From Marsupella aquatica (lineage: Eukaryota; Plantae; Marchantiophyta): DNA of 64,000 nucleotides. The notes beneath the pieces are model-generated. The model was not told where the DNA came from and made no database searches. It saw nothing but the letters and a program-made list of their open reading frames with translations. Position 1 is the stretch's first letter. Every line of letters starts with the position of its first letter. A program made the translations under genes and the position numbers. This document shows, piece after piece, positions 1 to 61,943 of this stretch. The DNA lies in assembly GCA_973895155.1 (NCBI GenBank), contig OZ316897.1:15127375-15191374 (forward strand), given 5' to 3'.

Positions 1-1
1 A

Positions 2-1729
2 GAACGCTGCCAGAATTGCCCATTTAACAAATCTTCCGAGTCAGGCACAGCAGGTCAGTCTCCGAATTCGGATGACACGGATGATGAGGAGTCTGAAAAG
101 AAACCACCACCACCGAAACCCTGCCCCCTAAAGGCAATTCTCGATGGAATGCCAAAAGAGTGGATCGAGGAGGGAGACGAGAGTTACACCGTTGTCATAA
201 AGAAGGCTCCACCACCAAAACTACATCCCCTCGTTCAAATTCTGAACGGCATGTCCCAAGTGATGGACAGGAGGGACTCCAACACGACTCGTGCGCTATT
301 CCTCAAAGACTTTGATGCGACACTACAAAAAATCAACAGTGATGCTGACTTAAAAGAGCCTGAACTAGACCGGTTGAGGCCTCGTCACTACACTAAGATC
401 CTGGACGCAATGGCCGGCGCTGTGGAATTCACAGATGAGAAGACCCACACTCAAAGGCTAGACCGTATGGTTCGGCAAACTCGGGATGAGGGGTTGATCA
501 GCAGCTGGGAAGCAAAGAAGAAGAAAAGGGCTGACGAATTGGCATTCAGGAGTCGTCAGAGTGTTCAGATGCTGCATTCCATGATCAATGTCCGGGAGTA
601 CGCAGATGATGCCAGGGATTACAGTGTCTGGCTTGATGGAGTGGCACCTGTAGACAACGAGAGCCAAAGTGAGGAACCAGAGAAAACTGTGTCGGAACTA
701 TCTGCAAATGGAAAACCTCGAGAGCCTCGTTTTCGTGAGGATTCTGCTGCCAACTTTCTCAATAGCGTAGCAGTGCAAATCCTTGACGAATTTAGTCATT
801 CCAAAAAACCCAAAGCTGACGGTTCACAGGGTACGTCTAAAGGCCCCAAAGAGCCGAGTTTCAGGGAGGATTCAGCAGCTAACTTCCTCGGTGCCATGTC
901 AAAGCAGATTAAGGAGCAATTCACAGACCACAGGAGTGGCGAGAGTGAAACAGGGGACCACTCGGAGGGGTCCAAGCACCCAAGATTCCGTGAGAAATCT
1001 GCTCTGAAGTTCATATCTACACTGGAAGAGCAACTCCGTCCGGACTTTGAAAATAGATCAGCGGAGAAGTCAGCAGCTGGGGTCCCCAGATTCCGGGACA
1101 AATCTGCAATTCACTTCCTGAACGCCCTCAGAGACGAAATTACGCAGGGTGGTTCAAATCCACCTTCTGAAGGCCCGAGTTCGACTGATCGAGATGTTCA
1201 ATCACAGACAACGCAAAACAATATGAGAAAGGGTAGCGCAAAGGCACCTTCCGAAGCTCCAAGTTCTAGTAGTAACGTTGTCCGATCAGAGACACAGCAC
1301 AGCAACGTGAGAAAGAGTGGCGCAAAGGCACCTTCTCAAGGCCCAAGTTCTAGTGGTCACGACGTCCAATCAGAGAGCCAGCACAAGAACGTGAGAAAGA
1401 GTGGCGCAAAGGCACCTTCTCAAGGCCCAAGTTCTAGTGATCACGATGTCCAATCAGAGACACGGCACACCAATGTGACAAACGGTGGCGCAAAGGCACC
1501 TTCTCAAGGCCCAAGTTCTAATGGTCACGAAGTTCAATCAGCGACAAAGCACAAGAATGTGAGAAACGGTAGCGCAAAGGAAACTTCTAGCAATCAAGAT
1601 ATTCAATCAGAGACAGACGACAAGACTGGGAGAAGGGGTGGCTCAAAGCCACGTTCTGAAAGTGCGAATTCAAGTCAACATGTCCAATCAAATACACAGC
1701 ACAAGAATGTGAACAAAAAACAAAAATAG
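2..1729 (+). CDS. 5'-truncated, largely disordered repeat protein of unknown function (terminal exon)
   Basis: The frame of ORF 149..1729 stays open back to base 2 (ERCQNCPFNK...). It contains four PxFR(E/D)xSAxxF(L/I) motifs and about 7 copies of a 28-aa Ser/Gly/Lys-rich unit. Confidence 0.75.
   Translation, partial: ERCQNCPFNKSSESGTAGQSPNSDDTDDEESEKKPPPPKPCPLKAILDGMPKEWIEEGDESYTVVIKKAPPPKLHPLVQILNGMSQVMDRRDSNTTRALFLKDFDATLQKINSDADLKEPELDRLRPRHYTKILDAMAGAVEFTDEKTHTQRLDRMVRQTRDEGLISSWEAKKKKRADELAFRSRQSVQMLHSMINVREYADDARDYSVWLDGVAPVDNESQSEEPEKTVSELSANGKPREPRFREDSAANFLNSVAVQILDEFSHSKKPKADGSQGTSKGPKEPSFREDSAANFLGAMSKQIKEQFTDHRSGESETGDHSEGSKHPRFREKSALKFISTLEEQLRPDFENRSAEKSAAGVPRFRDKSAIHFLNALRDEITQGGSNPPSEGPSSTDRDVQSQTTQNNMRKGSAKAPSEAPSSSSNVVRSETQHSNVRKSGAKAPSQGPSSSGHDVQSESQHKNVRKSGAKAPSQGPSSSDHDVQSETRHTNVTNGGAKAPSQGPSSNGHEVQSATKHKNVRNGSAKETSSNQDIQSETDDKTGRRGGSKPRSESANSSQHVQSNTQHKNVNKKQK
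1147..1715 (+). repeat. Coding tandem repeat, 84-bp/28-aa unit, ~7 copies
   Basis: The unit NVRKSGAKAPSQGPSSSGHDVQSESQHK recurs at about 1220, 1304, 1388, 1472 and 1556, with degenerate flanking copies. Confidence 0.9.
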
Positions 1730-2269
1730 GAAATGTTCAATTTCTGATAGAAAGCAGACATAGGGTGAGATAGCATGGTGCGAGCATAATGCAGTTCGTT
1801 CTTTGCAAAACAGAATTTCATCGTGAAACTTTGTTTGTTTTTATACCAGGAAGGTTGCATTACAAGAACAAATTAAGTGAGATAAGAATCTGAACAGCAG
1901 TGCTATCCGAAAGGTCAATCGAGCAAGTTTCCATCAACTAATGCTACTCGGTAAGGTGCACGTCCCTGTCCAACGGAATTGCTCTATCTGTACAAGAGCA
2001 AATCCGAACTGAGAACAGATTGTCAGTTCTGATGTCTGGAGTTCACTCAGAGGAAACCGACAATTTTAAGTAGTGTGATACATCTACTGTAGCTCATTTA
2101 TGAACTTTCAATACTCAGTTTCCCTCAAAGTGTACTTAATTGCTTCCTAGTCGTTAGCTACAGTAGCTTGAAATTCGGAATATAACTACCGGAGTCTCAT
2201 TATTTTTGGTATTGGGATTCTGGATGATCTGCATTCATATCTCTTCTCGAATGCCTCTCCATTTCAAAT

Positions 2270-2418
2270 ATGTCATTAAAGAGCATTGCTTCATTGATAG
2301 GTTGATGATCTGAGTTTGAACCCGGCCTCAAGCCCGATCGGACATGTCATTAAAGAGCATTGCTTCATTGATAGGTTGATGATCTGAGTTTGAACCCGGC
2401 CTCAAAGCCCGATCGGAC
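2270..2418. repeat. Near-exact tandem duplication (74/75 bp)
   Basis: atgtcattaaagagc...cccgatcggac occurs at 2270-2343 and 2344-2418, differing by one extra A. Confidence 0.95.
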
Positions 2419-4496
2419 AACATTGCTATGCAGTTTCTATTTCATCAATAGATAACGACCAATTACAACAATTTAAAACTGGCTGTTTTGTCGCCCACCT
2501 TCCCCCGGAAAATCCTGTTCAATTCTGCCCAACAACACCGTGTTCAAAAGTGTTCTCCTCGAGAACTCCCCAGTTTGGAAGTCATCTTCTCCATTTAAGA
2601 TCAAACAAACTAGTTCGTCGAGGTGGGAACGTCATCTTTCTAATCACAGTGATACTACAGTACTTATTTAGATTTGCTTCGAATTAGACTCTTCCGCTCA
2701 AATCGTCTGGAAATGCTTCAATCTTTCCTAAGTAAGCAGACAGCCAATCTTTAGTATCCTCCATCGTCAAGACGGGCGCCAAGATTGATTTCGCATCACT
2801 GTTCAATTTTCAGGATTTGTCTAGCTTTTCCACTTTACTCCTCAAATGAATTATTTCGACAATTACGCGAGACGTGAAGGGTTGATAGGTAATAATAGCA
2901 CTTTATACTAGGGGTGGTTTGCATTAAGTAGAGGTTACGTAAGGCAGTCTCATTCCTTTTAGCTCCAAAGTCGTTGTCATGGGAGACTGGATGGCCAATG
3001 ACAACATCAGATTAGCTGATGATTGGGGTTTCCGCGTGTAACGCCATTAAGTGGAGCCGGTAGGAACTGCAGACATGAGCTCTGCAAGCCTGCCCACCGG
3101 CAACACTAGGTTGGATCTGGAATGAGCCAAGGCAGTCTCCTAGGTTCGGTTCAGATGGAGCAGCACTTTGGTACATTTACAAAATTATATCAAAAAATCC
3201 GTATGAAATTACACAGGTCCGAAAGGATTCCGATATTCGAAAGGAGAAAAACCTGCCCGAAAGACACCAACGTGAGGCAGAGATAGAATCAAGCTATAGA
3301 ATCAAGCTTCGAAACACAACAACCGACACGTTTACGAGGAACAGTGTCAGAAGCGTATAGCGATTCCCATATTCGGCAACAGGTGACCAAAAAAGCTGAT
3401 TGAAATCTTGTTTCGCATAAGAAAAGCACCAGATCGTTGGAATTTCAAGTGGCAGCGAAGCCGCTGAAACAGAATATGTACACGAAGTTTCTAAATATGG
3501 ATCACGCCGAGACTAACCGGTGGCAAGAAATTACCTCTACTAAGTGGTACTAGACTACCTTCCAAAAAATGCTCGCAGCGATTTCAGAGCTTGAAATTTC
3601 ACTGTGGGCACATCAGTAGTTCTGGAAGACTACTGCGAACTAAAAAAACATGCACGTTTCCCAAAAATTCTTTAAAACTTTCCCGGCTGATCCATCTGCA
3701 GCTACACACCGATGGCACATAGCGTTGTCAGGATGAACACTTGGGTTATCATCGGTTTGTATCAGTACATGGGCTAGACTAACGTCGAGTTTGTGGTAAT
3801 CTCAGAGGTTTCCCGGGTTCAAGTGCAGAGTCGAGCAATCTGTCTACTAATTTAGGTTTAGATCAAGTCGACAAGCTTTCCGGTCCACCAGAAGTCCACC
3901 AACAAGTTTGGACTCCAGAGAGAAGACCATTGCTGCAATTAATTTCTCCCCGTGGTTCCTGAAGATGTTATTCCTACAGAATCGATGAATATAAGTAGCT
4001 CGTAAATCCAGTAACATTGAGGGTCAGTTAATCTGGTAGTTGACCGGAAGTCTCCTTCTGGGCCGTCTAGGGAGGCTCTTCGTCTGAAAGGTACGGTTCC
4101 TAGGTGGAACAGTACATGGTCAAACTTTTAATTGAAGTGTCCGCCCTGCTGCCAGATATGCACATGAGACCAGGGACGGACCCGTACAAGACTGAACTCT
4201 GCTTCGGCTGACTGGACTTCAAGCCGTATCACGTCGACTACCGTGGCCAACGCTAATATCTTTCTGGCACAAGGTATATGGTCTCAAATTGCTCACCACC
4301 AGCCTGAAGAAATTTTGCACCAATTTGAGAAGAGGAGAAAGGTACCGAACAGACGCCACCCCAGAGCAGGATGTCACGGCATACCTTTCCACATCTGTCA
4401 CGTAACATCACAGTCTCGTCAGTCGATCACGTGAAAAACTCTGAAGATCGTCACTTGAGAAAATCTGAACATCGAAGGGCTCAGAGATCATTTCAA

Positions 4497-6190
4497 CTAG
4501 CTATCTTGAATCCAGAAAAGGAGTCTGTTAGGCAATTTCACATCAAAGGATTTCCTGTAGCGGAGGACGGGTAAACGAAACGTACAACAGCAAGCATAAT
4601 ACCCACCTCTGCGCTCTTTCGAATCTTTCCGAACTTTTTTCGAGTCCACGTGAGAGCTCCGCACACAGTGCTCCAACTGCAGGCGCTTCAATTGATCAGC
4701 CACTTCGTTTATTTTGGGTCTCTTCGTCGGGTCCGGAGCGCAACATTTGATGGCCACGTCAATGAGCTCCTCCAGAAGGGCTCGGAGGCATTCTTTGCAA
4801 GGGACCTCGCCCTTGCTAAGAGACGGGCACCAGATGGAAGAGTCTACAATGTCATCCACGAGCCCTAGAGCTGACATCTCCATGACTAAATCTGGTAGGA
4901 AGGTCTTCGTCCGACTTTCCAGACCCACTTTCAAGCCGGTAACGAGCTCCATAAGGACCACGCCAAAGCTGTAGACGTCGGTGGTGTCTGTCAGCTTGCC
5001 CGTACTCTCATAGTGGGGATCGATGTATCCACGAGAGCCCTTGACTTTGGTGTAACAATAACTTCGATGTTTTTCGTGAGATATAGCCGCAGCAATCCCG
5101 AAGTCTGCAAGCTTTGCTCTTCGGTGCTGGTCCAGAAGGATGTTCGTGGTACGTACATCTCGGTGGTAGATGGGAAATTTACTGTTGTAGTGAAGCTGAG
5201 TGACCGCATCCGCGACATCAATAGCTACGGCCAATCTGTCATCCCAAGCAAGTCTCTTTGGAAAATGCCCTTGCAAATGCTGTTCCAAGTTGCCCTTGCT
5301 CACGTACTCGTAGACTAGGAGGGGATCATGCTCGGTAGAGCAGTATCCGAGCAATTTAACGAAGTGCGACGATTTGGGAAGACTTCGATGGAGAAACACT
5401 TCGTAGAGAACCTCTGCTAGTGAGTGACCTTGCTTGTCCTTGAACTTCTTCACAACTACAGAGTTGCCATCGGGAAGACATCCTTCATATAGTGTTCCAC
5501 CTTTCCCATCGTGTACGGCTTTGAGCTCAGAGAAGTTGTGAGTCGCCGCCCTCAGCTCTCTATGTGAATACCACGTGAAGCGAATGTTGGCCGCTCTTGT
5601 GTAGTACCACTGTCTGAACTTCGATTCTGTCATGATGAGACATAGACAAGACGGTTTGATTACGCAAAGCAAATGAAAAGTTTGGAATCAACCTGAGACA
5701 CTCCTGCACCACTCACTGTTGTTTTTCGAAATGTGTGACTAATCCAACTTGTTACCCCTCTCGTTACTGCTCCTACAAATGAAACTGAATTCGTGACAAT
5801 GTGCTAGCTGCCATATCTGAAGCTTACTCTAAGCCAACACAAATTACCGTACAGCTAGAGAACAAAAGACTGACCTCCATCAGCGTGAAGGTCATTCAAG
5901 ATGAAAAATTGGTGGATAAACTCCGTCCAGGCAGCCACCCGAGGCATCTTTTGCGATAAAGAGAGTTTCATGTGCGTGGCCGCCATCTCCAGGGTGTGGT
6001 CGGCCGACATTCCTTGCTGTAGAGCCCATTGACAGAAAAGAGTAAGCCAGCTCACGGCCTCTGATTTCTGTTCTTTGCCAGTATACGCTGGGACCACCAC
6101 ATCACCAGCTTTCGCCTTTGGAATGAGACTATCCAAACACTTCAATTTGAGTTGCCTCCGAAAATCGTCACTAAGAGCGTAGTGCGGCAT
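4497..6190 (-). CDS. RLK/Pelle (WAK/LRK10L-like) Ser/Thr kinase lacking a TM segment, predicted to be fused to an N-terminal Gag-capsid-like domain. Exons 6190-5875 and 5626-4497, ~481 aa
   Basis: Kinase motifs are WYSHRELRAATHNF, VVVKK, LLVYEY, HRDVRTTN, DFG, GSRGYIDP and DVYSFGVVLMEL. The upstream ORF 5855-6190 has a phase-1 donor (GGA G|gtcagt at 5875/5874) matching a phase-1 acceptor (gacag|AA TCG at 5627/5626). The joined length of 1446 nt is in frame. The kinase call is certain; the splice is a prediction. Confidence 0.8.
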
Positions 6191-8768
6191 TTTCGCACGA
6201 TCAAGTCAACTCTGAAGATTCAAAGATCCCGGCCCCGTTAGAACAGCTCTGGATCGCGTTCTGTTGACAGTACTCTCCTTTAGCACTTCTATTACTCGTG
6301 CATGTGGAGTTCAAGATAAGTTATAGCAGCTCTAAACGAAGGTTGTCAAAGGCAGACGAGACCTATAGCGAGCTGGACGAGGGGAGTCCTGTTAGTTGAT
6401 CAACTTAGCACGATAGCGACTAAGCAAGCACGTACATAGATCAGTGTATATGGATTGGTAGGAATGCCGTTAACTTGATGAAAAGGCGTTCACGAGAAGA
6501 GTAAGTAATGCACTGTAATGTCAACCCGTTGAAGCTAGTAGTGAAAAAATAAAGCCTTGGAAGATCATCCAAGGTGAGAGGCGAGCTCAGCTACAAATTG
6601 AACTCGCCTAATGATCATCCTACGCGGTCACGGTAAATGAAGTTATAGTACGATTCGTGTACCGTACTTCCTTCAAGAAACGAATGCAAAGTTAAGATGA
6701 TGGCAGAACAGATCAAGATCCTAAATGTATAATTGATACTGACGGGCCTGTAGTTCTAGAATGTCAGCTAGCTCGATTCTCACTCTAGACGGAAAGCAAC
6801 GCTACTAACTCCTGACAAAATGAATGAGGCAAAATAGGCGTCGAGAGTAATAGTGCAGCTACGAATTGATGTGAACAAGAGGTGGCTATCTTCACATATC
6901 ACAAGACTCGAGAGGAGTAAGTTACCAGCTCACTGGTTAATCGTACTGGTGATCATCAGATGGGAGGGAACGATATTAGAATAACATTAAGAAGCTCGTT
7001 TAAACTCTCCAGCTCGATCGAACAAGTTATTATCACCAATTAAAGCCGCAAGGCTTTGCGTGAAGGACCTGAATCCGAGAAAGAGAACAGGTGGAAGAGA
7101 TTGGCATTTCAAACAGTATTCAAGTACCCTTTGAGAGCTAGCGATGAAGGAAAGTCGCAAGCGCTGCACGACGTCGTCAACCTGAGTCTAGGTAGACAAC
7201 AATAAGCGGAGAAGAGGACTCGAACAGATTTCTCGTGCTCAGGAAATTAAGACCCTTTATAACCATATCCTTGCTCGGCAAACACGGAGTGCCTCGGGGA
7301 AGGCTTGCATGTCCTTCATACATTGGGATTCGTGAAATGGACTAATCAGGAAATGAATGACAATTTGTGGGAAGGGTTTGGTTTGTAGTTACTGTGTATT
7401 TCAGACGCGGAAAAAATGTACTTATGAAACTTGTAGCGGGAAATAAGCGTATTTAATGCTGGAAACGTGGATTATTAAAGCTCCCGAGAAGCTGGTGATG
7501 GAAATGACCTTTCATTCTTGTCCTCACTTCCTCCAGGAGGCAGGGGTGAACTGCAGAAGCTACAGTTTTCGTAAAAATTAACTTTCAGAAGGTGATGAAG
7601 AGTTCCGCGAAATATGGCAGCCGGGGCTTCAACCAGTCTCTCGAGCGCCCAGTTGGCCAATCTCCCATCCCCATTTATGTTTCTTTGGAATTCTGTTTAC
7701 TGTACAATCAGAAGTTGATCACTTTTTCATGGCTTCATTATATATCCCACACAAACCGTGCTCCCCACCACCACGTGCTCGAGCCGGTAAACTCTGGAGA
7801 CGACGTTCGAAACCATAAATTCCCATCTCGTCGCCGACACAAAGATATCACGGGGAATGGATCTGGCCGTCAGGGCTCTACTCTCCGTGAAGCTACCCGA
7901 TGCGACAAGAGTTTCATATGCCGGCTGTCTGTTTGCAAGCTACTCGGATCCCGGCGCCGCACATGAGAGTCAATTTTGTGCAAGCAACAAGGGCTTACGT
8001 CTCAACGGTAAATGCTAGTGGCCACCAAACTAGCGTTCTCACCGAAGAAGAAAGGGGGTCCTGAAACCCGGCGGCCGGGACGCAATCTTACATTTCGGCT
8101 GATGTTCACGTGAGGGTTTAGCAATATAGCATCCTAAAAATCTAAAATGGATCTGAATCAATCAATAAAAACCCTCCGGCCTCTAGGCTCATCGTAATCC
8201 ATGCAGAATCTAGCATGTCGCCGAATATGGTTTTGTCGTCTGACTAGCCGCAACTTCTGTAAGCTTTCTAACCCCCACATGCCGCACACGAGCTGCATTC
8301 AAGAAACACAAATAAATAGACAATCCTCGTAACAATCACTTAATTCCAATACTCCATGGGTAATATCTCCTTTTCCGAACGAAGCGTAGACAAAAAGTTC
8401 GTCTTTCGATTTTGTCCGGTATGCAGAGGCGAGCATCTCTAACCCTACTGGTTTTTTTTTAACTGTAAGTGTTTACTGTATGTGTTGATCATACCAGAAA
8501 AAATGCAAACATTGAGGTGTTGGCATAATCACAAGAACTCTATGTGTTTTCAGGAACAACGTTTTTTTATTGTATTTTTATATGAACGAGATTACACATT
8601 AATTAAATTTTTATTAGGTTTTAGATTAATCGATGGTAGACGGATGCTATACCTATTGTTCAGGGGAAATTACTTTATCAGAGCTAAGACTGTTTTTTTT
8701 TTCAATTGACAATGACAGCTACTGCGAGTGAACTTTTAAAAAAGTACATTGTCAGGCAATCCCCGATG

Positions 8769-8922
8769 ATTGGTATCCCCGATGATATGCGCAAATTCAA
8801 TCAAATGGGGTAATTAGAAAACCCCATTTGATTGAAGATGCTAATTATAGTAACTAATAAGCAAAGCCTCGTAACTAGTACCCAATTTGATTGAATTTGC
8901 GCATATCATCGGGGATACCAAT
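8769..8922. repeat. 44-bp inverted repeat (hairpin) with a nested alternative stem
   Basis: 8769-8812 is the reverse complement of 8879-8922 with 1 mismatch. 8796-8810 also pairs with 8822-8836. Confidence 0.9.
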
Positions 8923-9445
8923 AACCCAGGACTCGAGTTGGAATTGATAACCACATACAAATTAATTCTCAGTAGGGATTCATTATACAAACTACTGTCA
9001 GATGGCATGTTTGGTTGTATTGGAAACCTGGAACCAAAGTCAGCCACACTATGGGTATTGTACAGTAAGTATACTTTTAGACATTTGGATCTCGCCTAAT
9101 TGTTCACCTCACCACCTTCTTGCATGACAAAATAAAAGAGCGATTCACCCAATTCATGACTTGAGCATGGCTGGTCACCTTGGACTCGTAGAATTTCTCG
9201 GACAGAGTGACAAGATATCTACCCGATCAGTTCACCTAATCATTTGCATTGTTTTGTTTTCTTGTAAAGAGCTACTTTTTTCGAAATTTGTCCCAGACCA
9301 TGCATGGTACGTTGCGGTGGCATGTTCCCAGTAACCGAAGCATTCTCCAGAATGTGTGGAAATCGGCTCAATTGGCTGAATGGCTGAAATGATGAAGTGG
9401 ACAGGTGATCTATACTACGAATTTCGTGGGTCTTTCTGTTCATTC

Positions 9446-9880
9446 AGAACCACGCTGAATGTAAAATCACTCGGAATTGCTTTCAAGTCTCTTTATAGCC
9501 CAAAGACCTGTTCACATAAAGGTTTCAGCCACACGAATGGAAGGGGACAGCCATGACTCATGATTTAGATCGAGTGACACGACTGCAGTAGAAACCGCGC
9601 TGAAGGTAAAATCACTCGGAATTGTTTTCAGGTCTCTTTAGGGCCTAAAGACCTCTTGACAGAAAGTTGTTAGACCACACGAGTTGAAGGGGACAGTCAT
9701 GAATCACGATTTAGACCGAGTAACATGACTGGCAACAGATATGCAGTAGAAACTGCGCTGAATGTAAAATCACTCGGAAATGTTTTCAAGACTCTTGAGG
9801 CTCATGAAATCTTGACATAAAGTTGTCAAAAAACAGAATGGAAGGGGACAGTCATGAATCACAATTTAGACCTAGTGACA
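9446..9880. repeat. Tandem repeat, three ~145-160 bp units
   Basis: gctgaa(t/g)gtaaaatcactcggaa...gaaggggacag(c/t)catga...atttaga recurs three times. Confidence 0.9.
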
Positions 9881-10674
9881 TCGGTGGCAAAAGAAAATTG
9901 CAGAAAAATCCCTCGCCGAGTCTGCCATTTGGAAAGAATATTTATCTCTGCCCTTCACGCATCGCCGGATCGGCCACTGGTCCTGCCCAGTGTTCTGCAA
10001 AACAGTATACAGTCTGGAGTCCTTGATGCTCACTAAGGCACTATCTTGTGCGAAGAGCTTTCAGGTGTGCAAAGCTTTACAGTACATGTAGTCAACAAAT
10101 ATGAGCTGAGGCTGAAATGAGCTGCAGATTTTGGGGCCCCCTTTTCCATCGATGTTTACAGCAATGAAGAACCATAAGACGTTCCAAACTTGAGAGCTTT
10201 TAAAGAAAACCAGTCCAAAGAAGAAGAAAAAAGTTAAATAATTGGAAGAAAATAATGATGAATGTTTTCTTGATACTCTTGAGTATATTCACAGACATTC
10301 TGGGTGCTATAAAAGAAGTTTTCATTCAGTATTCACCAAAAATAATTTGCACATTTTTGTATGATACAAAAAAAAATTCCACATATAATTTATGTTCTAG
10401 AAAACCTCCTCCAAAAGTTCTATATTCTATCTCCACTTCATGAAACTTGAAATTATTTTCATTATTCATAATTGAAAATAACACATAGGTTTCCCAAGTT
10501 ATAAAACATCATTTGCAAAACACATATTATTTACAAAAGAATGAGAATTAAGATTATAAAAAAAACAATGAGCATTAAAAATTTTGTAAAAAATAAGCAT
10601 CTATGTACCACATGAGAAAAAAATGTATATCATCTTTGGTTACTCTCATCGGGTGTAAGTCTCAATATCTTTAA

Positions 10675-11785
10675 GGGCCACTATACAAGACGGGTGTGGC
10701 AATTTAGTCCCTCTTTTTTCAGGATCAAATCAATCACAACCGTTGTTTCAGCCTGCCTGGGCGCTCCTTGCCTCGTTCCCGCAAGTTGAGCTGTGGGAAC
10801 AACCAAACCTGCATTCTGGTATGGATCAGCTCGGGCCAGCCGGCTTGGGACTCTCATTCTGGCGCTAGACTATTGGACCTCCGGAGGTGCAAAAATGGGC
10901 AGGCAGCTTTCTCCTAAGATTTTATCATCATTCATGAGAGTGGATGAGCTGCAAGTCACCCGACCCCCGACTAGTTCTCTCCATGTCCATCTTTGCGCAG
11001 CACCAGTCTTCAACCCTGAAAATTCTCATGCTTTCCTTTTGTAGGAGTGCAACTTGTCACAAAGTGCAACAAAATTTATGGAGTGATATGGGCCGTGGAT
11101 CTCTGTCACACCATTCTAGGTAGTGTTAGAGCGTATCGTACTATCTAGATCCGTATGTTTGGTATGTGTGCTATATGAGCCGATAAGGTTCCGTTAGATT
11201 TGTGTGAGAGGATAGTTCTCTCTTGTGAGGCATTGAAAGGTTATCTTTCAATGTTGAGCCTTGGAGAGGGGAGCTTGTGTGGTGGCGATGGTGGCTGAGA
11301 GCTCTCTCTATGTAGCATGAATTCCTTGAGTGCAAGGTGCGTTGGCTCAACATACGTGTGTGATCGGATCAGACAGGATTGAATGCATATTGTTAGCGTT
11401 GATCGTTAATCAGATTCTATCAAGATTATTGTGAGTTTTGGACATGTGTGGACATGAGTTCCACCTGTATCCCATTTTCTTGTGTTTGTGATGTGGCAGT
11501 GTGACTATGTCTGGATGTATGTGACAAGCGATGTATGTTGTGTAGCGATGTGTATGCTCACGACATCTCTTTGTCACGTGAAAATGCCCTCGATGAGCTC
11601 CTGCCGGCCCCACTACTTGTCACTGAGATGCCCAGGCAGTCTTATCTTTAGAAGACATCCACGGCACTATTGGTTTTTTCCTGCCTTGGTCTGGTCTAGA
11701 GTCCTACCATACACGAAAAGTCGGGCTCTGTTACAGCCCTGGTAGAAAGCACTCAAATTGCCGCGCCCGTCTTGTAAAGTGGCCC
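10675..11785. mobile_element. Non-autonomous PIF/Harbinger (Tourist-like) DNA transposon, 1111 bp
   Basis: ~31-bp TIRs (gggccactatacaagacgggtgtggcaattt / aaattgccgcgcccgtcttgtaaagtggccc, 3 mismatches) are flanked by TAA on both sides (10672-74, 11786-88). There is no transposase ORF. Confidence 0.85.
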
Positions 11786-12698
11786 TAAGTTTCAAATTTG
11801 ACTTTCAAGTATTGGTTGAGTCGTCTAGTCGGATTCACCCCTATCGTCATTGGGATATATGTTCCAGAACTTTGTGCGGCCTTGAACACTGATCACAAGG
11901 GACAGATGCCCCTTTCTTGCTTTCTAAGTTTTTGCAGAAATCAATAGAGTAAACCAGTCTGGTACGTTGAGACCAAGAGGTGATCATCGTTTTGCATTGA
12001 GAAGGATCCTGGAAGCACAAATGGCGCATCATGAAATGCAGCCTAGGGGGTTGGACCGCCTTACCTGTTGCAACCTATCCCTAAACTTTACCAGACATAA
12101 AGATTGAAAGGGTAAGACTGAGGTTCATGGCTAATGAATTTAATTGAGATCTATTGTATTGAAGTAATGTGTCCAGGCACATTAAAGAATTGGTATTTAC
12201 AGAGATTCGTACTCTCAATAGTGTCAGGTTTCTGAGAACTAGTTAGTTTTTCTCAGTTTGTATTTTAGAATAATTCCTTTACTCTATTCTTATCCTAGGG
12301 AAATTTGCACAAGTCTTTGAACTTGAATTACTTGAAATTTAGTGGATTTCTTGGGGAGAAGTGGTTGGGTCAGTGACAAAAGTGCTGGTGATTGTATATA
12401 TAACTTGTAGGTGCCTATTACAACTGTAAGCTACTCTCAAGGGCTACTGACAAGAGTAAAGCCTCTAAGCCATGACTCTCTGGCTTAATTAACCAAAAGT
12501 TAGTGGGGTTGCAGGCTAGGTTGCAGGCAGAAAATAGAGATTAGGGGCAAGTCATTGATGAATGTGAATAGTACAAGATCCCTTTTTTGGGCAGGGACAT
12601 ATTGTTCACCCCTTATTCATGTTTATTGAACCAGTAGTCAAGCTAGCAACCATATAACCCACCCTTTGTCTAGAGTGAATCCTCTAGATTGTGAGTAC

Positions 12699-12804
12699 GG
12701 GGTAAGTTTTGGTGAATGTGAATTATAGTAGGGTGAACATTGATGTTCAAAGGGGTAAGTTTTGGTGAATGTGAATTATAGTAGGGTGAACATTGATGTT
12801 CAAA
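12699..12804. repeat. Exact 53-bp tandem duplication
   Basis: ggggtaagttttggtgaatgtgaattatagtagggtgaacattgatgttcaaa occurs twice. Confidence 0.9.
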
Positions 12805-15800
12805 GGTGAATAGAAGGGAGAATGTGAACATGAAGGTTTTTTTTGTTTTCACCTCTATTCATATATGTTCAAAGAGTGGGCAGTCAGGCTAGTTCCTCAA
12901 ATTTGTGTTTCATTGTTACATGGATTCTTGGAGCGGATCCAAGTGAGACTTTGTAATTCCAAAACTTTTTGCTTGTTTGACCTTTCATGTCTTTCTTGTA
13001 GTGACTGTTCATGTCCTTTTTTTTCTTTTTTAAAGGGGAAATATGTGAAACCCCACAGAAAGGGAAGAGGTCAGTGACAATATATGGGAAGAGTCAGCCA
13101 CAACAGTTGAACCCAAGACCTATCAGTCTCTACTCAAATGAGCTACCACAAATTCATGCCTCTTTGGGCGACTGTTCATGTCTTTTACCCTCCTTAAGAG
13201 AATTTTCTTAAGAAAATGGAAGAAATACACAAAATTAATCCTTGTATCTACACCCTAGACTTAACCTGACCTAACAATTCAAAGTTCACTCTCACTTTGC
13301 TGGTTTGATGGTTCTTGCTAAGTTTGGTGATAGAGCAAGCATGTTCAAATATTTTCTATTTTCTGTGATGATCACCATGTCATTTACAGCACCCACATTT
13401 GGATCTTGCCTGAGTCAGGGAGATGCCAAAAAACCCATTTGCGCTAAATTCTCCACAAATGATCAGAGTTTCCAATATGAAGTTATGGATATAACCTCAG
13501 GGGTCTAACTAATGACAATCTACATTCAAGCTATTATGATCGATCTCTTGTGTAGTCCCCTATTTACTCTAATCTGAGGGTGCCGACACTTAGGCTAATA
13601 CTTAGAAGGTCCGCACGAAGACATGTTTTCTCCAAAGTTAGTAGAATTAGAACTCTGTATGCTGCCCAACCATAGTTGTTATTAACCATAATCATATAGC
13701 TACAAATGATCATAGCGGATACTTAATCATATATGGTCCCATAGCCAATAGATACAAAAGTAGGTAAATACTTCAGGTTCAAACTGAAGTGGTGCTTGGA
13801 TGGACCAGGGATAGTGTTAACAGAAAACCAGTGATGATGGATGGATAGAAACTGGGTTACAAGAAACCGGGATGGATGAACATGGACCACGTGAGTGGTA
13901 ACAAAAGCTTGGTTTTATTGCAAAGAACAAGTGCTCAATCCTCAAAAACCATTTCGTCAGGCATTTAGGTCCATGGGGATTTAGGTTTCGCTGGTTTTTT
14001 TTAATAATTTAGCTGGGGTCTATCTATACTCCATTTAAAAGCTGGGGTGAATGCTTTTAAGTGAAAATGTTGGATGAATTAGTTAGTTTTGAATCTATAT
14101 TTCTGTAGTACCATGTAAGCATTTGATGCTCTGAATATATATATATATATAATATTGTTTAGTAGGAAGTAGACTGGTGAGATTTCTTAAAAAAAACTCC
14201 TCGCAACAAAACTTGTATATTCATTCTACTAACTTTAAAATAAAAATCATTGGTAAAGTCTGTGTTTTTTGGTTGTCAATCATTTTTGGGTGACTTTTTA
14301 CAGGTTAGAGTTCTGTTAGTTCCCTTTCCTGAGAGAAAATTTTCACTTTCCCAAACATTTTCAAGTACTTTTCTCTACATAATTTTTTAATTTGTATTCA
14401 ATTAAGTTGTCCTAACTACGTATTATCCAATGTGCAACTTTTCATGTCCCCAAATAGTTCAATAAAATAAGCTTATGTAACCAAGGGGTCCTCAAGCTAA
14501 TTTATGATATACCTTGATAAACCTAATTATTATCTATAGGCTATTGAATGTGATTTCAAAATTCTTAGGAAAAAAATGCTCCCATGGAGCACAAAATTGG
14601 TCTTTTCAAACTTGAGCCCAGTCAACATGTGGCTTTTGGGAGGTATTTCTAGGAGTTTCATAACTTAGGGTACTGAATAAATTCATGGGTATCAAAGTTA
14701 TAAAAGGAAGTTGACAAAATGATAGACTATTGGTTTATGTTTGATAAACTTGGGCCAAGGCCAACTAAGAACAACCTGGTAATCACAGATCAAAATATGG
14801 CTGCATTCATTGATTGAAAGAAAAAAACTAAGATTATTCATTGATTGAAAGAAAAAAACTAAGATTATCACTGTATGCATGCAGGGGTGCAGTTCATAGT
14901 ATATGTCATATTTTTCAAGAAGAACATTGAGAATTGGGGCGAACAACGTACAGGGCTCCGATAAAATGGGGAAACATGAACTCCATGTAAATTTAAAGCG
15001 CGGCCGTTGTTAGACTTGCAAGCTCTTGTCTCATGCACAAACGTTGGCTGTCCAGATGGCGGTTCCATAGGGATCATTGCTACATTCAACAAGCCTACAT
15101 TAATCCGCTTTCCATGTCAACCGTGAGTATGATGTGCATTGAATTAAGAGGAGGTTGATTGATTGAATACGAACTTATGAAGAATTTATGTTGCCCTTCC
15201 CTGCAAAAGTACCTTTCTTTATGAGTTAATGCGCATGATAGTACCGTTAGCACGAGAGAAGCTCACATGCTTGTTTACAGCACATGTAGACTGCTTAATT
15301 GCTTATAATCATCTCACCTTGCATCATCCAAGATCCTTGGAGGAAGTCCGTATCAACCGTATTCTTGAGCTTTTCCCATTAGGCAGTTCTGACTCGAGTT
15401 CTGAAGTTTACGATGTAAAGTGAAGCAATTGAACGAAATGATTGTTTTGTCGTTGCAGGATCAGTAATCCACTCTATGCCAACTATGTGAGCAACGTGGC
15501 TGTTGAATCTTGCTCAGATAACAACAATCTTTCCTGATTTTGCTACTTTTAGTGAGATAACTACATTGTTGCGGTGCCCCATGTGGCCAGCTCTGGACTG
15601 CCCACCGTATGCATTGTCCTGCTATTCACGGATTGATAAGTTGGATGCCGTGTTTCATCCCGCACATGGAAGAGGCATTGTGCAATAGGTGTCACTCGTG
15701 AATTGCACCTTCTCGATTCCGGTCCCTAAATAGTCATTAATCAGGAGAGAATCAACGACAAAGTCATTTCAAAGTCTCAGTATACCGTTGATCTAGGACC

Positions 15801-17896
15801 CAACAATGGCGGCCTAAAGATAAGTTCATGGGCAATTGAGAGTCCTTCTTTGGTGGTTTCCTCTCAGCTGACGTCATAATTATAAATTAATTCGAGTAGG
15901 ATTAAACCACCCATCATCTCACCTCAGTTCAGCATTCGAAAGCAATCCGAGTATCATCAATTCACCCACCTAGGAGGGAGTACGACTGATTGCCCCCGGC
16001 TGAAGTGTAGAGAGCAATCACTATAGTCTATTGCGTTTGGTTACTACAGTGGGGAAGATCAGGTTACGTCAAAAAATAATTAGGTCCAAGACGAAAAAAA
16101 TTAAGTCCAAAAATGTCTATAACTGCTCCAAACCACTTATCTGAAAGTACACATTCATTACATTGATTGAATACTTGCCAATAAGAGCACATGTAAGTAG
16201 AGTAATTGTGCACTGATTAATAAAAGTAGACTACGAGAATGGTGCAGCTTTGAATGATTGCCATGAATCTACTTTAGTTTCCAGGTGCTCCATCGTCCTT
16301 ATATGCTCGATCAATATTCATCATCTACTTTGCACTTACTCAAGAAGCAGTGCAGAAAGTGTAATCCACCTATAATTTATCCGAGGTAATTTACAAGTTC
16401 TTTTATAATTATTGTTTGTATCAAAGATTGAATTGCAAGCATCTACTTTTGCAGTTGCAGCGACTGTGCTTGGGGGAACCCTTAGGTAGTGGTTCCGAGT
16501 ACTTGAGGAGCAGACAAGGAGAACCCTTAGCAGCAATCCACTAGCAAATCCACTAATCTTCAGGGCATGGCAAGATTCGACTTGATCTCATCCCATTGCT
16601 GATGTTGAGTGCCAGTGGATAGAATTTTTTCCAGAAGTTGCTGGAATGAAATCGCTGATGGAAATTAGTCAAATTTCTGATCGAAGTAGCAGACAACAGG
16701 GCCAAATTTCTACCCTCACGCCGTGGTTCTGATTCCCGGCAAGATAGAATTCGGACGTGACCACGTGCCAAAGATTGATGAACAGAGAGGGATAGCGGAT
16801 GAAGGACTCTTGACGAACGTTTTACCGGCGGCTTCGAATGAGAACAAAGTTTTTTCAATCAATTATTTGCTAGCTGCATGCTGACTCTCGACATATAGAT
16901 ACTCTTCTTCTAAGACAAAGTTAATAATACTTTATCATGGGACTCTTGAAGACAAGAAACTACAGCCCTTCATTTAATGAGGTCATCAAATGAATGAAAC
17001 CGAACATTTCTCTCTCCGTCCTAAACCCTGGAATGGTCAAGCATGGTTTCCTCTTAACTACATCTCAACATGATGATACGATATTATCTCCATCGTCATT
17101 CATTTTATTCATTCAATCATTCGTCTGACAGACTATTGCCGTAACGACAGAAAGTGGAGTTTGTAACGGGAAAATTATTTTTTGTAGTGAAATTTAGTGA
17201 CTGCATTTTTGTTTTCAATTTTGTAGTTGAGTGTTTCCACATTATTTTTGTGCCACGCAATGATATCACAGTGAGTAAGGCTCTCGCTATATGCAATTAT
17301 CCCAGTCTCGAGAAAATTATGAGTTCAATGTTCGTCTCCTTCAATCTGTGCGAAGCACTGGAATAAATCGTCAGACACGAAGGAATCCTTTTTAATCTAC
17401 GAATCTTTGGGCTTCATCTCTCTTCATGGCCACCGTACTGCATTTCAAAAGGATTCACTCGCACACTCACTGATACAATTACACCTGACAGAATACGAAT
17501 TTACTATGAATCACACCTGATTAATTCTATAAACATTCAGTGGTTTTCATGGGCAATTTTAGATTTCCTCTCAAGCACGAACTTAAGGATACTCATAATG
17601 GCCGTGTTGAGATGACAAGCCAAGTCGATCTCTTTAATTTGAAACAGGGTAAATAATGTCTTGTCTTGAAACTATACGGGTTTGTATATCATTCGTCATC
17701 CATTAAATAAATGGGAGTGCTTTTGCTTCAAGGAACCAAACTTCAACCACTGACACCGACCTTGCTGAGAATGCGTGTGCATTGCATTAGCGACACGATC
17801 TTAGTTTATGGTGGGTATCCATGGTTGGAGATGTTGCAAGCATATAGTCTTTGCCCGAGTCTTTGTCAAGTACAATCACTAGGGCCTTGGGCAGTG

Positions 17897-23346: not shown

Positions 23347-23680
23347 GAGAGGTATGGTTGTGTGGTAGCTAACTTGTGTGTAAACTCACTTGAGTAGAGA
23401 TTGATAGGTCACTTCAGTGGAGAGGTATGGTTGTGTGGTAGTTACCTTGTGTGTAAACTCACTTGAGTAGAGATTGATAGGTCACTTCATTGGAGTGGAG
23501 AGTAATAACTATTGGATTCAAATGTTGTGACTGATTGTTCACTCTCTATGAGATTTCACAAATTCGATGCTAGGAGTAGAGATTGATAGGTCACTTCAGT
23601 GGAGTGGAGAGTAATAACTATTGGATTCAAATGTTGTGACTGATTGTTCACTCTCTATGAGATTTCACAAATTCGATGCT
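23347..23680. repeat. Nested tandem duplications (~74-bp and ~108-bp units)
   Basis: gagaggtatggttgtgtggtag...ggtcacttca occurs twice, overlapping with two copies of gagtagagattgataggtc...aaattcgatgct. Confidence 0.9.
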
Positions 23681-24672: not shown

Positions 24673-25226
24673 CAAAAAGAGACTCGTTTTGGGAAGAAAA
24701 TACTCGAAGCAATGCATAAAAGAGAGATTAAAAGAACGCATGACATCACTGGATCTTGCTACAAAGAAATCGAAGCACGGATATCGGTATTAATTTTCAT
24801 AGTACCGTAGCGACGGACAGAGAGGACCATTTTGAAGGTCACTGGATTAGTGCACAGAGAACATTGATCATGGTGGTTGTGAATCAGTTTCTTCCGGTAG
24901 AAATGGAACTCCGATTGAAGGGCGAAATTTAGCCTCGAATGATGTGCAGTGAAAGTGACAAACTCGTTTTACTCTTTTAGAATTTTAGATACGAGTCTCT
25001 AACAAACAGGTCGTTCCTGTTGTTCTTGTGGCCTGCAACAGCATGACTTTCAAGTGATCTTCGAATGCTGAATGCATCTCGTGGAAGAGAGTCGTGCGCT
25101 TTTAGCTCGTGGGAGAGATGCAACGCTGGTAGCCGGCTCTATGTAGAATCGAAACGGACCTTCGTTTGGCTGCAACGAAGCTCACGATTCCACACTCCAA
25201 TCCATTTCCGCCAACCTACCTCAACG

Positions 25227-59690: not shown

Positions 59691-59694
59691 ATGG

Positions 59695-61741: not shown

Positions 61742-61943
61742 CTCGAAGTAAAAACGTTGCTTGATAGGATTGAAGGTTCTTTGCCATGTCAAGGATCGGA
61801 AATTGTTCTCGAAAACGCCTTTTCTTAGAGTCCAAGCTTTGTGGCCATCTTCCACAGTTCGACGTCCTCCAGTTTGTCATCCTGCCAGCTCAAAATCGAG
61901 ATGGTGTAGCCCATCACCTTCTGTACGGAATTATTCAAGCAAT

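What the first reader, a model, noticed from the sequence alone, without database searches (positions are those of the whole stretch)
4497..6190. Predicted Gag-capsid-kinase fusion: a retrotransposon capsid-like exon spliced onto an RLK/Pelle kinase
Seen in sequence: the 111-aa ORF at 5855-6190 has its own ATG (aaaATG, in-frame stop upstream) and a good phase-1 donor (GGAG|gtcagt). This joins in frame to a phase-1 acceptor at the start of the kinase exon across a 248-nt intron. The exon reads VPAYTGKEQKSEAVSWLTLFCQWALQQGMSADHTLEMAATHMK...AAWTEFIHQFF. Established knowledge: Ty3/gypsy Gag capsid N-terminal domains follow the pattern P-x-F/Y-x-G...W-L-xx-F...G-x-S/D...L-xx-A...W-x-E-F...F, and the exon matches it apart from the usual central A-xx-W. 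I see no LTRs, pol or zinc knuckle next to it, and the kinase keeps K, HRD and DFG. Inference: this is a domesticated capsid domain on a soluble kinase. It could act as an oligomerisation module or as an integrated decoy or sensor for retroelement or viral capsids, analogous to plant kinase-fusion immune proteins. I do not know of a described Gag-kinase fusion in plants.
Basis: partly seen in the sequence, partly recalled or inferred. Interest (0 to 1): 0.85.

Follow-up and report, generated by a model that had tools for sequence, protein, structure and literature searches.

The report
Liverwort kinase with capsid-like N-terminal domain
This is a real, spliced liverwort gene in which a small helical domain that most resembles the front half of a retrotransposon capsid protein (like animal Arc) is fused to a soluble receptor-like kinase; the fusion is conserved across liverworts, but the capsid link is still below statistical proof.

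Summary
Exon 1 (6190-5875, minus strand) joins in phase 1 across a 248-nt GT-AG intron to the kinase exon (5626-4607). An annotated Calypogeia fissa protein (91% identical) has the same junction. The same N-domain plus kinase architecture occurs in Marchantia (MpRLK-Pelle_WAK_LRK10L-3/-7/-9, Mp3g00080, Mp3g06070), Riccia and Calypogeia. An exhaustive HMMER search found the domain only in front of this kinase. Every hit that carries a name is a liverwort protein, and no hit is a Gag or Pol protein. The domain is single-copy in the window, has no LTR, zinc knuckle or pol nearby, and is about as conserved as the kinase.

The Gag reading has convergent support that stays below significance:
- Two AlphaFold models (pLDDT 84 and 79) give a strand plus helical bundle.
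- The only geometrically good Foldseek PDB matches are Arc-family capsid domains. dARC1 ranks 1 (probability 0.60, rmsd 2.6 Å) and the human Arc N-lobe has rmsd 2.3-3.5 Å.
- The only non-kinase Pfam match in line with the hypothesis is Ty3_capsid, for two paralogues.

No test reached significance: Foldseek E was at least 1.7, Pfam gave 13 bits against a 29-bit cut-off, and profile searches of PDB sequences found no capsid.

Verdict: the fusion is real and ancient, and a capsid-NTD-like fold is likely (about 0.65). The function is untested.

The parts
5875..6190 (-). Exon 1: start codon (6190-6188) and the 105-aa N-terminal domain. The exon ends in phase 1 at GGAG|gt.
   Evidence: It is 89% identical to residues 1-105 of C. 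fissa P0001 and 52-61% identical to the Marchantia, Riccia and Calypogeia orthologues.
6173..6184 (-). N-terminal strand H-Y-A-L of the conserved M-P-x-[YF]-A-L motif (a PxY motif). It is a predicted beta-strand at residues 4-6.
   Evidence: AF2 model. M1 and L6 are invariant and Y4 is at least 90% conserved.
6077..6097 (-). V-V-P-A-Y-T-G strand (residues 32-38). It is the proposed equivalent of the capsid NT-strand (P-x-F/Y-x-G).
   Evidence: Predicted strand at residues 31-33. V33, P34 and G38 are nearly invariant in 28 sequences. The Pfam Ty3_capsid match of the paralogue P0146 starts at the equivalent residue.
5897..6067 (-). Helical core of the N-domain (residues 42-98): helices 42-58, 63-78 and 88-98. 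It includes W-L-x-x-F-x-x-W-A, G-x-S-x-D-x-T and W-x-E-F-x-x-x-F-F.
   Evidence: AF2 pLDDT is 81-92 in this part. Foldseek match to the human Arc N-lobe 6tnq_C: rmsd 3.5 A over 71 columns, TM by target 0.52, E 4.4.
5627..5874 (-). Intron 1, 248 nt, GT...AG, phase 1.
   Evidence: The position is conserved across the five paralogue lineages compared.
4607..5626 (-). Exon 2: juxtamembrane-like linker (SKFRQWYY...WYSHRELRAATHNF) and the complete RLK/Pelle kinase domain.
   Evidence: Pfam PK_Tyr_Ser-Thr 1.6e-34 and Pkinase 1.3e-33. It is 91% identical to P0001.
4689..5519 (-). Protein kinase catalytic domain. Motif positions: Gly loop 5507-5487, beta3 Lys in VVVKKF 5459-5442, alphaC Glu 5408-5388, HRDVRTTN 5165-5142, DFG 5105-5097.
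4395..4606 (-). Probable intron 2 (212 nt, AGAG|GTGGGT ... GTGACAG|AT, phase 1).
   Evidence: Inferred from the C-terminus of the C. fissa model P0001. It was not tested with RNA.
4219..4394 (-). Probable exon 3 (about 58 aa tail, stop codon at 4221-4219). It is present in the C. fissa annotation but absent from the Marchantia and Riccia orthologues.
   Evidence: No Pfam match. If intron 2 is not spliced, the CDS ends instead at the stop codon 4499-4497.

Best explanation
The locus is a three-exon (at least two-exon) liverwort gene. It is the orthologue of an annotated Calypogeia fissa gene and of Marchantia MpRLK-Pelle_WAK_LRK10L-7/-3. It encodes a soluble, probably active RD-type Ser/Thr kinase of the WAK/LRK10L clade.

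The usual ectodomain and membrane anchor are replaced by a roughly 100-aa N-terminal domain. This domain consists of two short strands and a compact bundle of three helices (four in some paralogues). Its best structural and sequence resemblance is to the N-terminal lobe of Ty3/gypsy-type Gag capsid proteins, that is, the Arc N-lobe or dARC1 CA-NTD.

The most likely history is that a Gag CA-NTD was captured as a 5' exon in front of a kinase exon before the Marchantiopsida-Jungermanniopsida split. It has since been kept under purifying selection and duplicated into at least five lineages.

Inferred mechanism: the domain contains only the N-lobe, with no C-lobe and no nucleocapsid, so it cannot build a capsid. 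It more likely serves as a peptide- or protein-binding or autoregulatory module. Like the Arc N-lobe, it would hold an extended P-x-F/Y strand in a hydrophobic cleft. Here that strand may be the protein's own conserved N-terminal M-P-x-[YF]-A-L strand paired with V-V-P-x-[FY]-x-G. Such an arrangement would recruit the kinase to partners or gate its activity.

Shown: gene structure, conservation, architecture, intact kinase motifs and the predicted fold. Inferred: Gag ancestry and the binding or regulatory role.
For: - Gene model: same junction in P0001. The intron position is conserved in the five lineages compared. An in-frame stop lies upstream of the ATG, and both splice sites are canonical.
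- Architecture and distribution: 9 of the 120 best kinase homologues carry the domain, and all nine are liverwort proteins. Exhaustive phmmer over 1.84 billion representatives gave 11 true hits. Each is either N-domain plus kinase or a truncated call of such a gene, and none is Gag or Pol.
- Taxonomy: the hits span two liverwort classes.
- Constraint: N-domain identity tracks kinase identity, for example 89/91%, 55/66%, 60/64% and 61/51%.
- Not a TE: single copy in the window, no flanking LTR pair, no zinc-knuckle, RT, PR or IN motifs, and ordinary neighbouring genes.
- Fold: AF2 models with pLDDT 84.3 / pTM 0.78 and pLDDT 79.1 / pTM 0.75.
- Foldseek against PDB, second model: rank 1 is dARC1 capsid 6s7y_B (probability 0.60, rmsd 2.6 A over 73 columns) and rank 3 is 6s7x_B (probability 0.51). 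Human Arc N-lobe 6tno_A has TM by target 0.67 and rmsd 2.3 A; 7r1z_A has rmsd 2.5 A. Every other listed hit has rmsd of 7 A or more and probability of 0.06 or less.
- Foldseek against PDB, first model: the highest-probability and only low-rmsd hit is Arc N-lobe 6tnq_C.
- Pfam: among the eight N-domain-only proteins scanned, the only hits at E<=10 are Ty3_capsid, for P0146 (E 0.066, residues 31-105 against profile positions 12-91 of 198) and P0123 (E 0.29). These paralogues keep the Gag-typical A-x-x-W motif.
- Literature: in dARC1 the NT-strand lies in the alpha1-alpha4 cleft, and rat and human Arc bind PxF/Y peptides there as a small beta-sheet (PMC6938703, PMC7941041).
- Soluble: no TM-grade hydrophobic segment.
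Against: - No test of the Gag relationship reached significance. The best Foldseek E-value was 1.7, and there were no hits at E<=0.001 in PDB or BFVD.
- The window's own exon has no Pfam hit at all.
- Ty3_capsid scored 13.1 bits against a 29.1-bit cut-off. It was found in only 2 of 28 members, in the same E-value band as evident noise hits such as PuR_N and DUF5946.
- Profiles of the domain found no Arc, Ty3 or PEG10 sequence in the PDB at E<=10.
- The window's own domain is predicted with three core helices, not four.
- Small helical bundles have unrelated look-alikes: acyl carrier proteins resemble the Arc lobes (PMC7941041).
- The MSAs are shallow (10 and 28 sequences).
- The strand pairing and the cleft occupancy were read from DSSP only, because the model coordinates could not be inspected.
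- No RNA data were available for this window, and the function is entirely untested.
Confidence: 0.6

Rival explanations
1. The fusion is real, but the N-terminal domain is a liverwort-specific helical domain with no ancestry in Gag. The resemblance to Arc or Ty3 capsid N-lobes would then be fold analogy plus a few chance motif matches (W-x-E-F, P-x-F/Y-x-G).
For: All similarity scores are below significance. Profile searches of PDB sequences return unrelated proteins through the tW.eF motif. The exhaustive phmmer search finds no Gag protein, although plant Gag proteins should be abundant in such a library. Arc lobes have unrelated structural analogues (PMC7941041).
Against: Two models of divergent paralogues each pick Arc-family capsid domains as the only low-rmsd, highest-probability hits out of 350,542 chains. 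Of 24,736 Pfam families, the only one matched by the N-domain-only sequences is a Ty3 capsid family, and the match is colinear with the whole domain. The A-x-x-W motif is present in paralogues. All of this matches a hypothesis stated before any search was run.
Confidence: 0.3
2. The two ORFs are separate units. The kinase is translated from Met 5633 (MTESKF), and the upstream ORF is an independent small gene or a non-coding chance ORF.
For: An in-frame ATG exists at 5633-5631 inside the proposed intron. No RNA evidence for this window could be examined.
Against: The orthologue models in C. fissa, Marchantia and Riccia join the two parts at the same residue. The 15 residues upstream of the acceptor in the kinase ORF (MLCVIKPSCLCLIMT) have no counterpart in any homologue, whereas SKFRQWYY does. 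The intron position is conserved in five lineages. The N-domain is never found without the kinase, except in truncated gene calls.
Confidence: 0.03
3. Exon 1 is a recently captured or decaying fragment of a high-copy retrotransposon that gene prediction has joined to the kinase by chance.
For: Weak Gag-like features only.
Against: The exon is single copy in 64 kb. There are no LTRs and no pol or zinc-knuckle motifs. Only 11 true relatives exist among 1.84 billion representatives, all of them kinase-linked. Identity to Marchantiopsida orthologues is 52-61%, the same as for the kinase.
Confidence: 0.02

Closest known systems
Marchantia polymorpha MpRLK-Pelle_WAK_LRK10L-7 and -3 (P0002, P0003) and the Calypogeia fissa unnamed protein P0001
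   Same: They are orthologues with the same N-domain plus kinase architecture, the same junction and the same kinase motifs. Identity is 91% (C. fissa) and 62-68% (Marchantia) in the kinase, and 89% and 55-60% in the N-domain.
   Different: The window's gene differs from the C. fissa protein at about 10% of residues, so it comes from another species, subgenome or haplotype. Calypogeia has a possible extra C-terminal exon that the Marchantia proteins lack. None of these proteins has an annotated N-domain: the precomputed Pfam lists show kinase families only.
Arc / dARC1 capsid N-lobe (Ty3/gypsy Gag CA-NTD; PDB 6s7x, 6s7y, 6tno, 6tnq)
   Same: They share a short N-terminal strand followed by a compact helical bundle of about 70 residues. 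Foldseek superpositions give rmsd 2.3-3.5 A over 57-73 columns at 15-21% identity. The motifs P-x-F/Y-x-G, W-L-x-x-F, A-x-x-W (in paralogues) and W-x-E-F-x-x-x-F occur in the same order. The Arc cleft binds PxF/Y strands (PMC7941041), and the liverwort family has two conserved PxF/Y strands.
   Different: There is no C-lobe, no N-terminal coiled-coil or matrix-like region and no RNA-binding part, and the domain is fused to a kinase. The similarity is statistically subthreshold. The window's copy is predicted with three core helices rather than four. It is a plant protein, not an animal one.
Plant kinase-fusion and tandem-kinase immune proteins, and integrated-domain receptors (from general knowledge, not tested here)
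   Same: A soluble RLK/Pelle-type kinase is joined to an unrelated integrated domain.
   Different: Those proteins are mostly fast-evolving, lineage-restricted cereal resistance genes. This family is conserved across two liverwort classes, and its N-domain diverges at the same rate as the kinase. No immune role is known.
Animal Pelle/IRAK kinases (death domain plus kinase)
   Same: The IRAK4 kinase domain is among the best PDB matches. The overall layout is also alike: a small N-terminal helical interaction domain followed by an RLK/Pelle-family kinase.
   Different: The N-domain is not a death domain. No death-domain structure appears among the Foldseek hits, and the model has strands plus three to four core helices rather than a six-helix bundle.

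Membership tests
RLK/Pelle protein kinases, WAK_LRK10L clade | Protein kinase catalytic domain above Pfam gathering score | tested here: met
   PK_Tyr_Ser-Thr 119.8 bits (cut-off 23.1) and Pkinase 117 bits (cut-off 31.7).
RLK/Pelle protein kinases, WAK_LRK10L clade | Catalytic residues: beta3 Lys, alphaC Glu, HRD Asp, DFG Asp | tested here: met
   VVVKKF, LYEVFLH, HRDVRTTN and DFG are located. The Lys of HRDxK is Arg here, Thr in C. fissa and Lys in Marchantia.
RLK/Pelle protein kinases, WAK_LRK10L clade | Closest named relatives belong to the subfamily | tested here: met
   The best named hits are MpRLK-Pelle_WAK_LRK10L-7/-3, followed by WAK-like kinases of mosses, lycophytes and seed plants. 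No tree was built.
RLK/Pelle protein kinases, WAK_LRK10L clade | Receptor configuration: signal peptide, ectodomain (GUB_WAK or EGF) and transmembrane helix | tested here: not met
   No hydrophobic segment lies outside the kinase core, and there is no ectodomain Pfam hit. The protein is therefore a cytoplasmic (RLCK-like) member.
Ty3/gypsy Gag capsid (Pfam Ty3_capsid PF19259, Retrotrans_gag PF03732) | Sequence match at or above the family's gathering score | tested here: not met
   The window exon gives no hit at E<=10. The best family member, P0146, scores 13.1 bits against a 29.1-bit cut-off, and only 2 of 28 members hit. No Retrotrans_gag hit was found.
Ty3/gypsy Gag capsid (Pfam Ty3_capsid PF19259, Retrotrans_gag PF03732) | CA-NTD fold: NT-strand plus four-helix bundle superposable on solved capsid N-lobes | tested here: inconclusive
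   dARC1 and human Arc N-lobe are the top-probability and only low-rmsd hits (rmsd 2.3-3.5 A), but E is 1.7-5.6 and probability is at most 0.60. BFVD gave no capsid hit.
Ty3/gypsy Gag capsid (Pfam Ty3_capsid PF19259, Retrotrans_gag PF03732) | Second capsid lobe (CA-CTD) needed for lattice formation | tested here: not met
   The domain ends after the last helix (residue 98 or so), and the kinase linker follows directly.
Ty3/gypsy Gag capsid (Pfam Ty3_capsid PF19259, Retrotrans_gag PF03732) | Retroelement context: nucleocapsid zinc knuckle, pol, LTRs | tested here: not met
   No such motifs were found in any frame of the 64-kb window. There is no LTR pair in 1-20000.
Ty3/gypsy Gag capsid (Pfam Ty3_capsid PF19259, Retrotrans_gag PF03732) | Self-assembly into capsid-like particles | not testable with these tools
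   This needs expression and EM or SEC-MALS.
Domesticated (exapted) Gag genes | Single-copy host gene with orthologues across a clade, and loss of mobility functions | tested here: met
   Orthologues and paralogues occur in Marchantiopsida and Jungermanniopsida. The gene is single copy here and has no TE parts. This holds only if Gag ancestry is accepted.
Domesticated (exapted) Gag genes | Purifying selection (dN/dS < 1) on the Gag-derived part | not tested
Indirect evidence is that protein identity in the N-domain equals that in the kinase.
Death domain-kinase (Pelle/IRAK) architecture | Six-helix death-domain fold at the N-terminus | tested here: not met
   No death-domain structure appears among the Foldseek hits. 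The models show two strands plus four to five helices.

The most novel reading that the evidence does not exclude
Before the liverwort classes diverged, the N-terminal lobe of a Ty3/gypsy Gag capsid was exapted as the regulatory or peptide-binding domain of an RLK/Pelle kinase. It founded a multigene family with at least five lineages in Marchantia. This would be the first Gag-kinase fusion and one of the oldest Gag domestications in plants, and it would work through an Arc-like PxF/Y-binding cleft rather than through capsid assembly.
Probability: 0.5. Interest if true: 0.8.

Novelty: new variant of a known kind. Interest (0 to 1): 0.62.

Why it matters
Domesticated Gag capsid domains are well known in animals (Arc, PEG10, PNMA). 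There they keep both capsid lobes and often still assemble into particles. I found no paper describing a capsid N-lobe fused to a protein kinase, or describing this liverwort N-domain.

If the ancestry holds, three things follow. A single capsid lobe can be reused as a signalling module. Plants would gain an ancient example of Gag exaptation. The Arc-type peptide-binding cleft would have evolved or been retained independently in a plant lineage.

The family has members in Marchantia polymorpha, a tractable genetic model. Knock-outs, interaction screens and structures are therefore directly feasible.

If the ancestry fails, the result is still a conserved liverwort-specific N-terminal domain on a soluble WAK/LRK10L-type kinase for which the sources give no name or Pfam family. 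That outcome is of moderate interest only.

Tried and rejected
- Pfam on the window's exon 1 at E<=10: no hit.
- Word-indexed homologue searches with exon 1 and with P0001 residues 1-105: almost nothing, because the index is insensitive for this domain.
- Profile searches against PDB sequences:
  - The first profile (A2) was swamped by kinases, because kinase columns entered the profile.
  - The short-only profiles A3 and A5 and the single sequence P0146 gave only chance hits: a sulfonylurea repressor, sulfotransferases, heparinase III and PLK4.
- Foldseek against BFVD viral structures: no capsid and nothing significant.
- Fetching orthologous DNA for dN/dS and intron checks:
  - Two metagenome scans found nothing.
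  - The intron position was instead inferred from read-through versus spliced protein calls.
- A search of the window for a resident Gag or retroelement to serve as a comparison: none found.
- A profile-profile (hhalign) test against a Gag alignment was not run. No Gag sequences were available by reference, and I did not type sequences from memory or from printed output.
- The joined (spliced) protein was never built or searched.
- Death-domain and TIR readings were rejected, because Foldseek hits to TIR had rmsd of 15 A and there were no death-domain hits.
- P0130 and P0132 from the exhaustive search were rejected as repeat-protein artefacts.
- The contig is from a liverwort, not human.
Full report
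**1. The observation**

On the minus strand, an ATG at 6190 opens a 111-aa ORF. An in-frame TGA lies upstream at 6208-6206. A canonical donor (GATGGAG|GTCAGT) ends a 316-nt exon at 5875 in phase 1. A canonical acceptor (CATGACAG|AATCGA) opens the next exon at 5626. The split codon G+AA encodes Glu, and the intron is 248 nt.

The downstream ORF (5672-4497) is a complete protein kinase: PK_Tyr_Ser-Thr 1.6e-34 and Pkinase 1.3e-33. It has the beta3 Lys, alphaC Glu, HRD and DFG.

I handled the exons separately by reference throughout. The joined coding sequence was never built or searched.

**2. Is the splice real?**

The best homologue of the kinase exon is an annotated Calypogeia fissa protein, P0001 (503 aa, 91% identity). 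Its first 105 residues are 89% identical to exon 1. It reads ...DLHVDG-E-SRFRQWYY... across exactly the proposed junction.

The next hits begin with the same M-P-x-Y-A-L-S... domain followed by the kinase. They are Marchantia polymorpha MpRLK-Pelle_WAK_LRK10L-7 and -3, three Riccia proteins and a second Calypogeia protein.

In five paralogue lineages the databases hold both a spliced full-length model and a short unspliced gene call. The two diverge at the same residue, just before the x-x-F-x-x-W-Y motif. The first read-through residue is always Gly, as expected for a phase-1 G|GT donor. The domain-boundary intron is therefore conserved in all the lineages compared.

The residues upstream of the acceptor in the kinase ORF (MLCVIKPSCLCLIMT) have no counterpart in any homologue.

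No RNA data for this window were available. A minor kinase-only isoform starting at Met 5633 cannot be excluded.

The C. fissa model also implies a second intron (4606-4395) and a third exon (4394-4219). That tail is absent from the Marchantia and Riccia proteins, so it remains uncertain.

**3. Source and context**

The window comes from a liverwort close to Calypogeia (Jungermanniales). It is not human.

The surroundings are ordinary. There is a short-chain dehydrogenase ORF and an RRM-protein ORF, no Rfam hits and no flanking LTR pair. No zinc-knuckle, RT, protease or integrase motif occurs in any frame. No second copy of exon 1 or of the 3-kb region exists in the 64 kb.

**4. Distribution of the N-domain**

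An exhaustive phmmer search with exon 1 against 1.84 billion representatives gave 13 hits at E<=0.001. Two are repeat-protein artefacts. The other 11 are either N-domain plus kinase proteins or truncated calls of such genes.

All hits that carry names are liverwort proteins:
- Marchantia polymorpha Mp3g00080, Mp3g06070 and MpRLK-Pelle_WAK_LRK10L-9
- M. paleacea
- Riccia fluitans
- Calypogeia fissa

No Gag or Pol protein was hit.

Non-liverwort relatives of the kinase, such as WAK-like kinases of mosses, Selaginella and seed plants, lack the domain; those that carry a non-kinase Pfam domain have WAK-type or other unrelated ones.

The N-domain is about as conserved as the kinase. N-domain/kinase identities are 89/91% to C. 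fissa, 55/66% and 60/64% to Marchantia, and 61/51% to the Calypogeia paralogue. These figures span two liverwort classes, which argues for long-term purifying selection.

No transmembrane-grade segment exists, so the protein is soluble.

**5. Is the domain Gag-capsid-like?**

Evidence against, or neutral:
- The window's exon has no Pfam hit even at E<=10.
- Profiles of the domain find no Arc, Ty3 or PEG10 sequence in the PDB.
- BFVD gives nothing.
- No Foldseek hit reaches E<=0.001.

Evidence for, from the two structure models:
- An AlphaFold model of exon 1 (10-sequence alignment) is confident, with pLDDT 84.3 and pTM 0.78. It shows strand 4-6, helix 8-17, strand 31-33 and helices 42-58, 63-78 and 88-98.
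- In Foldseek against the PDB, its only low-rmsd hit, and the one with the highest probability, is the human Arc N-lobe 6tnq_C. The values are rmsd 3.5 A over 71 columns, TM by target 0.52, probability 0.16 and E 4.4.
- A second model was made for a divergent paralogue, P0146 of the Marchantia LRK10L-9 lineage (28-sequence alignment, pLDDT 79.1, pTM 0.75). It has a four-helix core at 43-59, 64-76, 80-88 and 92-105.
- Its rank-1 PDB hit is the Drosophila dARC1 capsid domain 6s7y_B (probability 0.60, rmsd 2.6 A over 73 columns, E 1.7). Rank 3 is 6s7x_B (probability 0.51).
- The human Arc N-lobe 6tno_A (rmsd 2.3 A, TM by target 0.67) and 7r1z_A (rmsd 2.5 A) follow.
- All other listed hits have rmsd of 7-20 A and probability of 0.06 or less.

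Evidence for, from sequence:
- Among the eight N-domain-only sequences, the only Pfam hits at all are to PF19259 Ty3_capsid. P0146 scores E 0.066, with residues 31-105 matching profile positions 12-91 of 198, and P0123 scores E 0.29.

Caveats:
- The Pfam scores lie in the same band as obvious noise hits in the 28-member scan.
- Arc lobes have unrelated fold analogues, the acyl carrier proteins (PMC7941041).

My reading is as follows. Together they make a capsid-NTD-like fold likely (about 0.65) and Gag ancestry plausible (about 0.5). Neither is demonstrated.

**6. How it probably works**

The kinase part has all catalytic motifs and is an RD kinase. The Lys of HRDxK is Arg here, Thr in C. fissa and Lys in Marchantia, so its activity should be checked.

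The N-domain corresponds to one capsid lobe only. There is no C-lobe and no nucleocapsid, so capsid-type assembly is unlikely.

In dARC1, the native N-terminal strand lies in the alpha1-alpha4 hydrophobic cleft. In mammalian Arc, that cleft binds PxF/Y peptides, which form a small sheet with the N-terminal strand (PMC6938703, PMC7941041).

The liverwort family has two conserved PxF/Y-type strands, M-P-x-[YF]-A-L at residues 1-6 and V-V-P-x-[FY]-x-G at residues 32-38. Both are predicted as short beta-strands.

I therefore infer a peptide- or protein-docking or autoregulatory module in which the protein's own N-terminal strand may occupy or cover the cleft. This inference rests on secondary structure only, because the model coordinates could not be inspected.

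An integrated-decoy role is possible. However, the slow, kinase-like rate of divergence and the deep conservation are not what is typical of decoys.

**7. Comparison and novelty**

The gene is a member of an already annotated kinase family (RLK-Pelle_WAK_LRK10L in Marchantia). No source annotates its N-domain: the precomputed Pfam lists show kinase families only.

I found no paper on a Gag-kinase fusion or on this domain.

It fails formal membership of the Pfam Gag families, because the score is below the cut-off, there is no C-lobe and there is no retroelement context. It may nonetheless work like an Arc N-lobe.

I rate it a new variant of a known kind (exapted capsid domain; kinase fusion), with interest 0.62. 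It would be higher if a profile-profile or experimental test confirms the ancestry.

- A profile-profile test against a Gag alignment was left out for lack of referenced Gag sequences.

Noticed in passing
window 4219-4606 (minus strand): The C. fissa orthologue model adds a third exon (a tail of about 58 aa, VERYAVTSCSG...RRDTA) through a second phase-1 intron. The tail has no Pfam hit and is absent from the Marchantia and Riccia orthologues. It may be lineage-specific or an annotation artefact.
   Followed up: partly
window 5142-5165 (minus strand): The catalytic-loop Lys of HRDxKxxN is Arg in this gene (HRDVRTTN) and Thr in C. fissa (HRDVTSTN), but Lys in the Marchantia and Riccia orthologues. 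This could affect activity in the Calypogeia lineage.
   Followed up: no
window 149-1729 (+), repeats at 1146-1588: This 526-aa ORF has no Pfam hit. It contains 5.3 tandem copies of an 84-nt (28-aa) unit at about 80% identity.
   Followed up: partly
window 25065-26444 (+) and 48263-50377 (+): The neighbouring long ORFs encode a short-chain dehydrogenase-like protein (adh_short 2.5e-15) and an RRM-domain protein (RRM_1 4e-14). These are ordinary host genes, and no transposon proteins were seen.
   Followed up: partly
window 58001-60000: This is the local G+C maximum (0.564, against about 0.43 for the window), with a strongly negative GC skew. It was not examined.
   Followed up: no
window 2270-2419, 9448-9880, 23347-23680, 61936-62324: These are short intergenic tandem duplications with periods of 74, about 150, 73/109 and 138 nt. 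None of them flanks the kinase gene.
   Followed up: no
proteins P0126, P0138, P0139 (Riccia fluitans R1flu_005881, _005882, _005892): Several members of the divergent N-domain-kinase subgroup have near-adjacent locus tags in Riccia fluitans, which suggests a local tandem cluster. Some of the models are split or truncated.
   Followed up: no
protein P0125 (Marchantia Mp3g00080): This paralogue carries about 80 extra residues in front of the Y-A-L-T-D strand. The conserved P-x-Y strand therefore need not be at the very N-terminus of the protein.
   Followed up: no
proteins P0130, P0132: Two repeat-rich proteins of unknown origin reached E<=0.001 in the exhaustive search, only by summing five short repeated stretches. 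They are artefacts, not relatives.
   Followed up: yes
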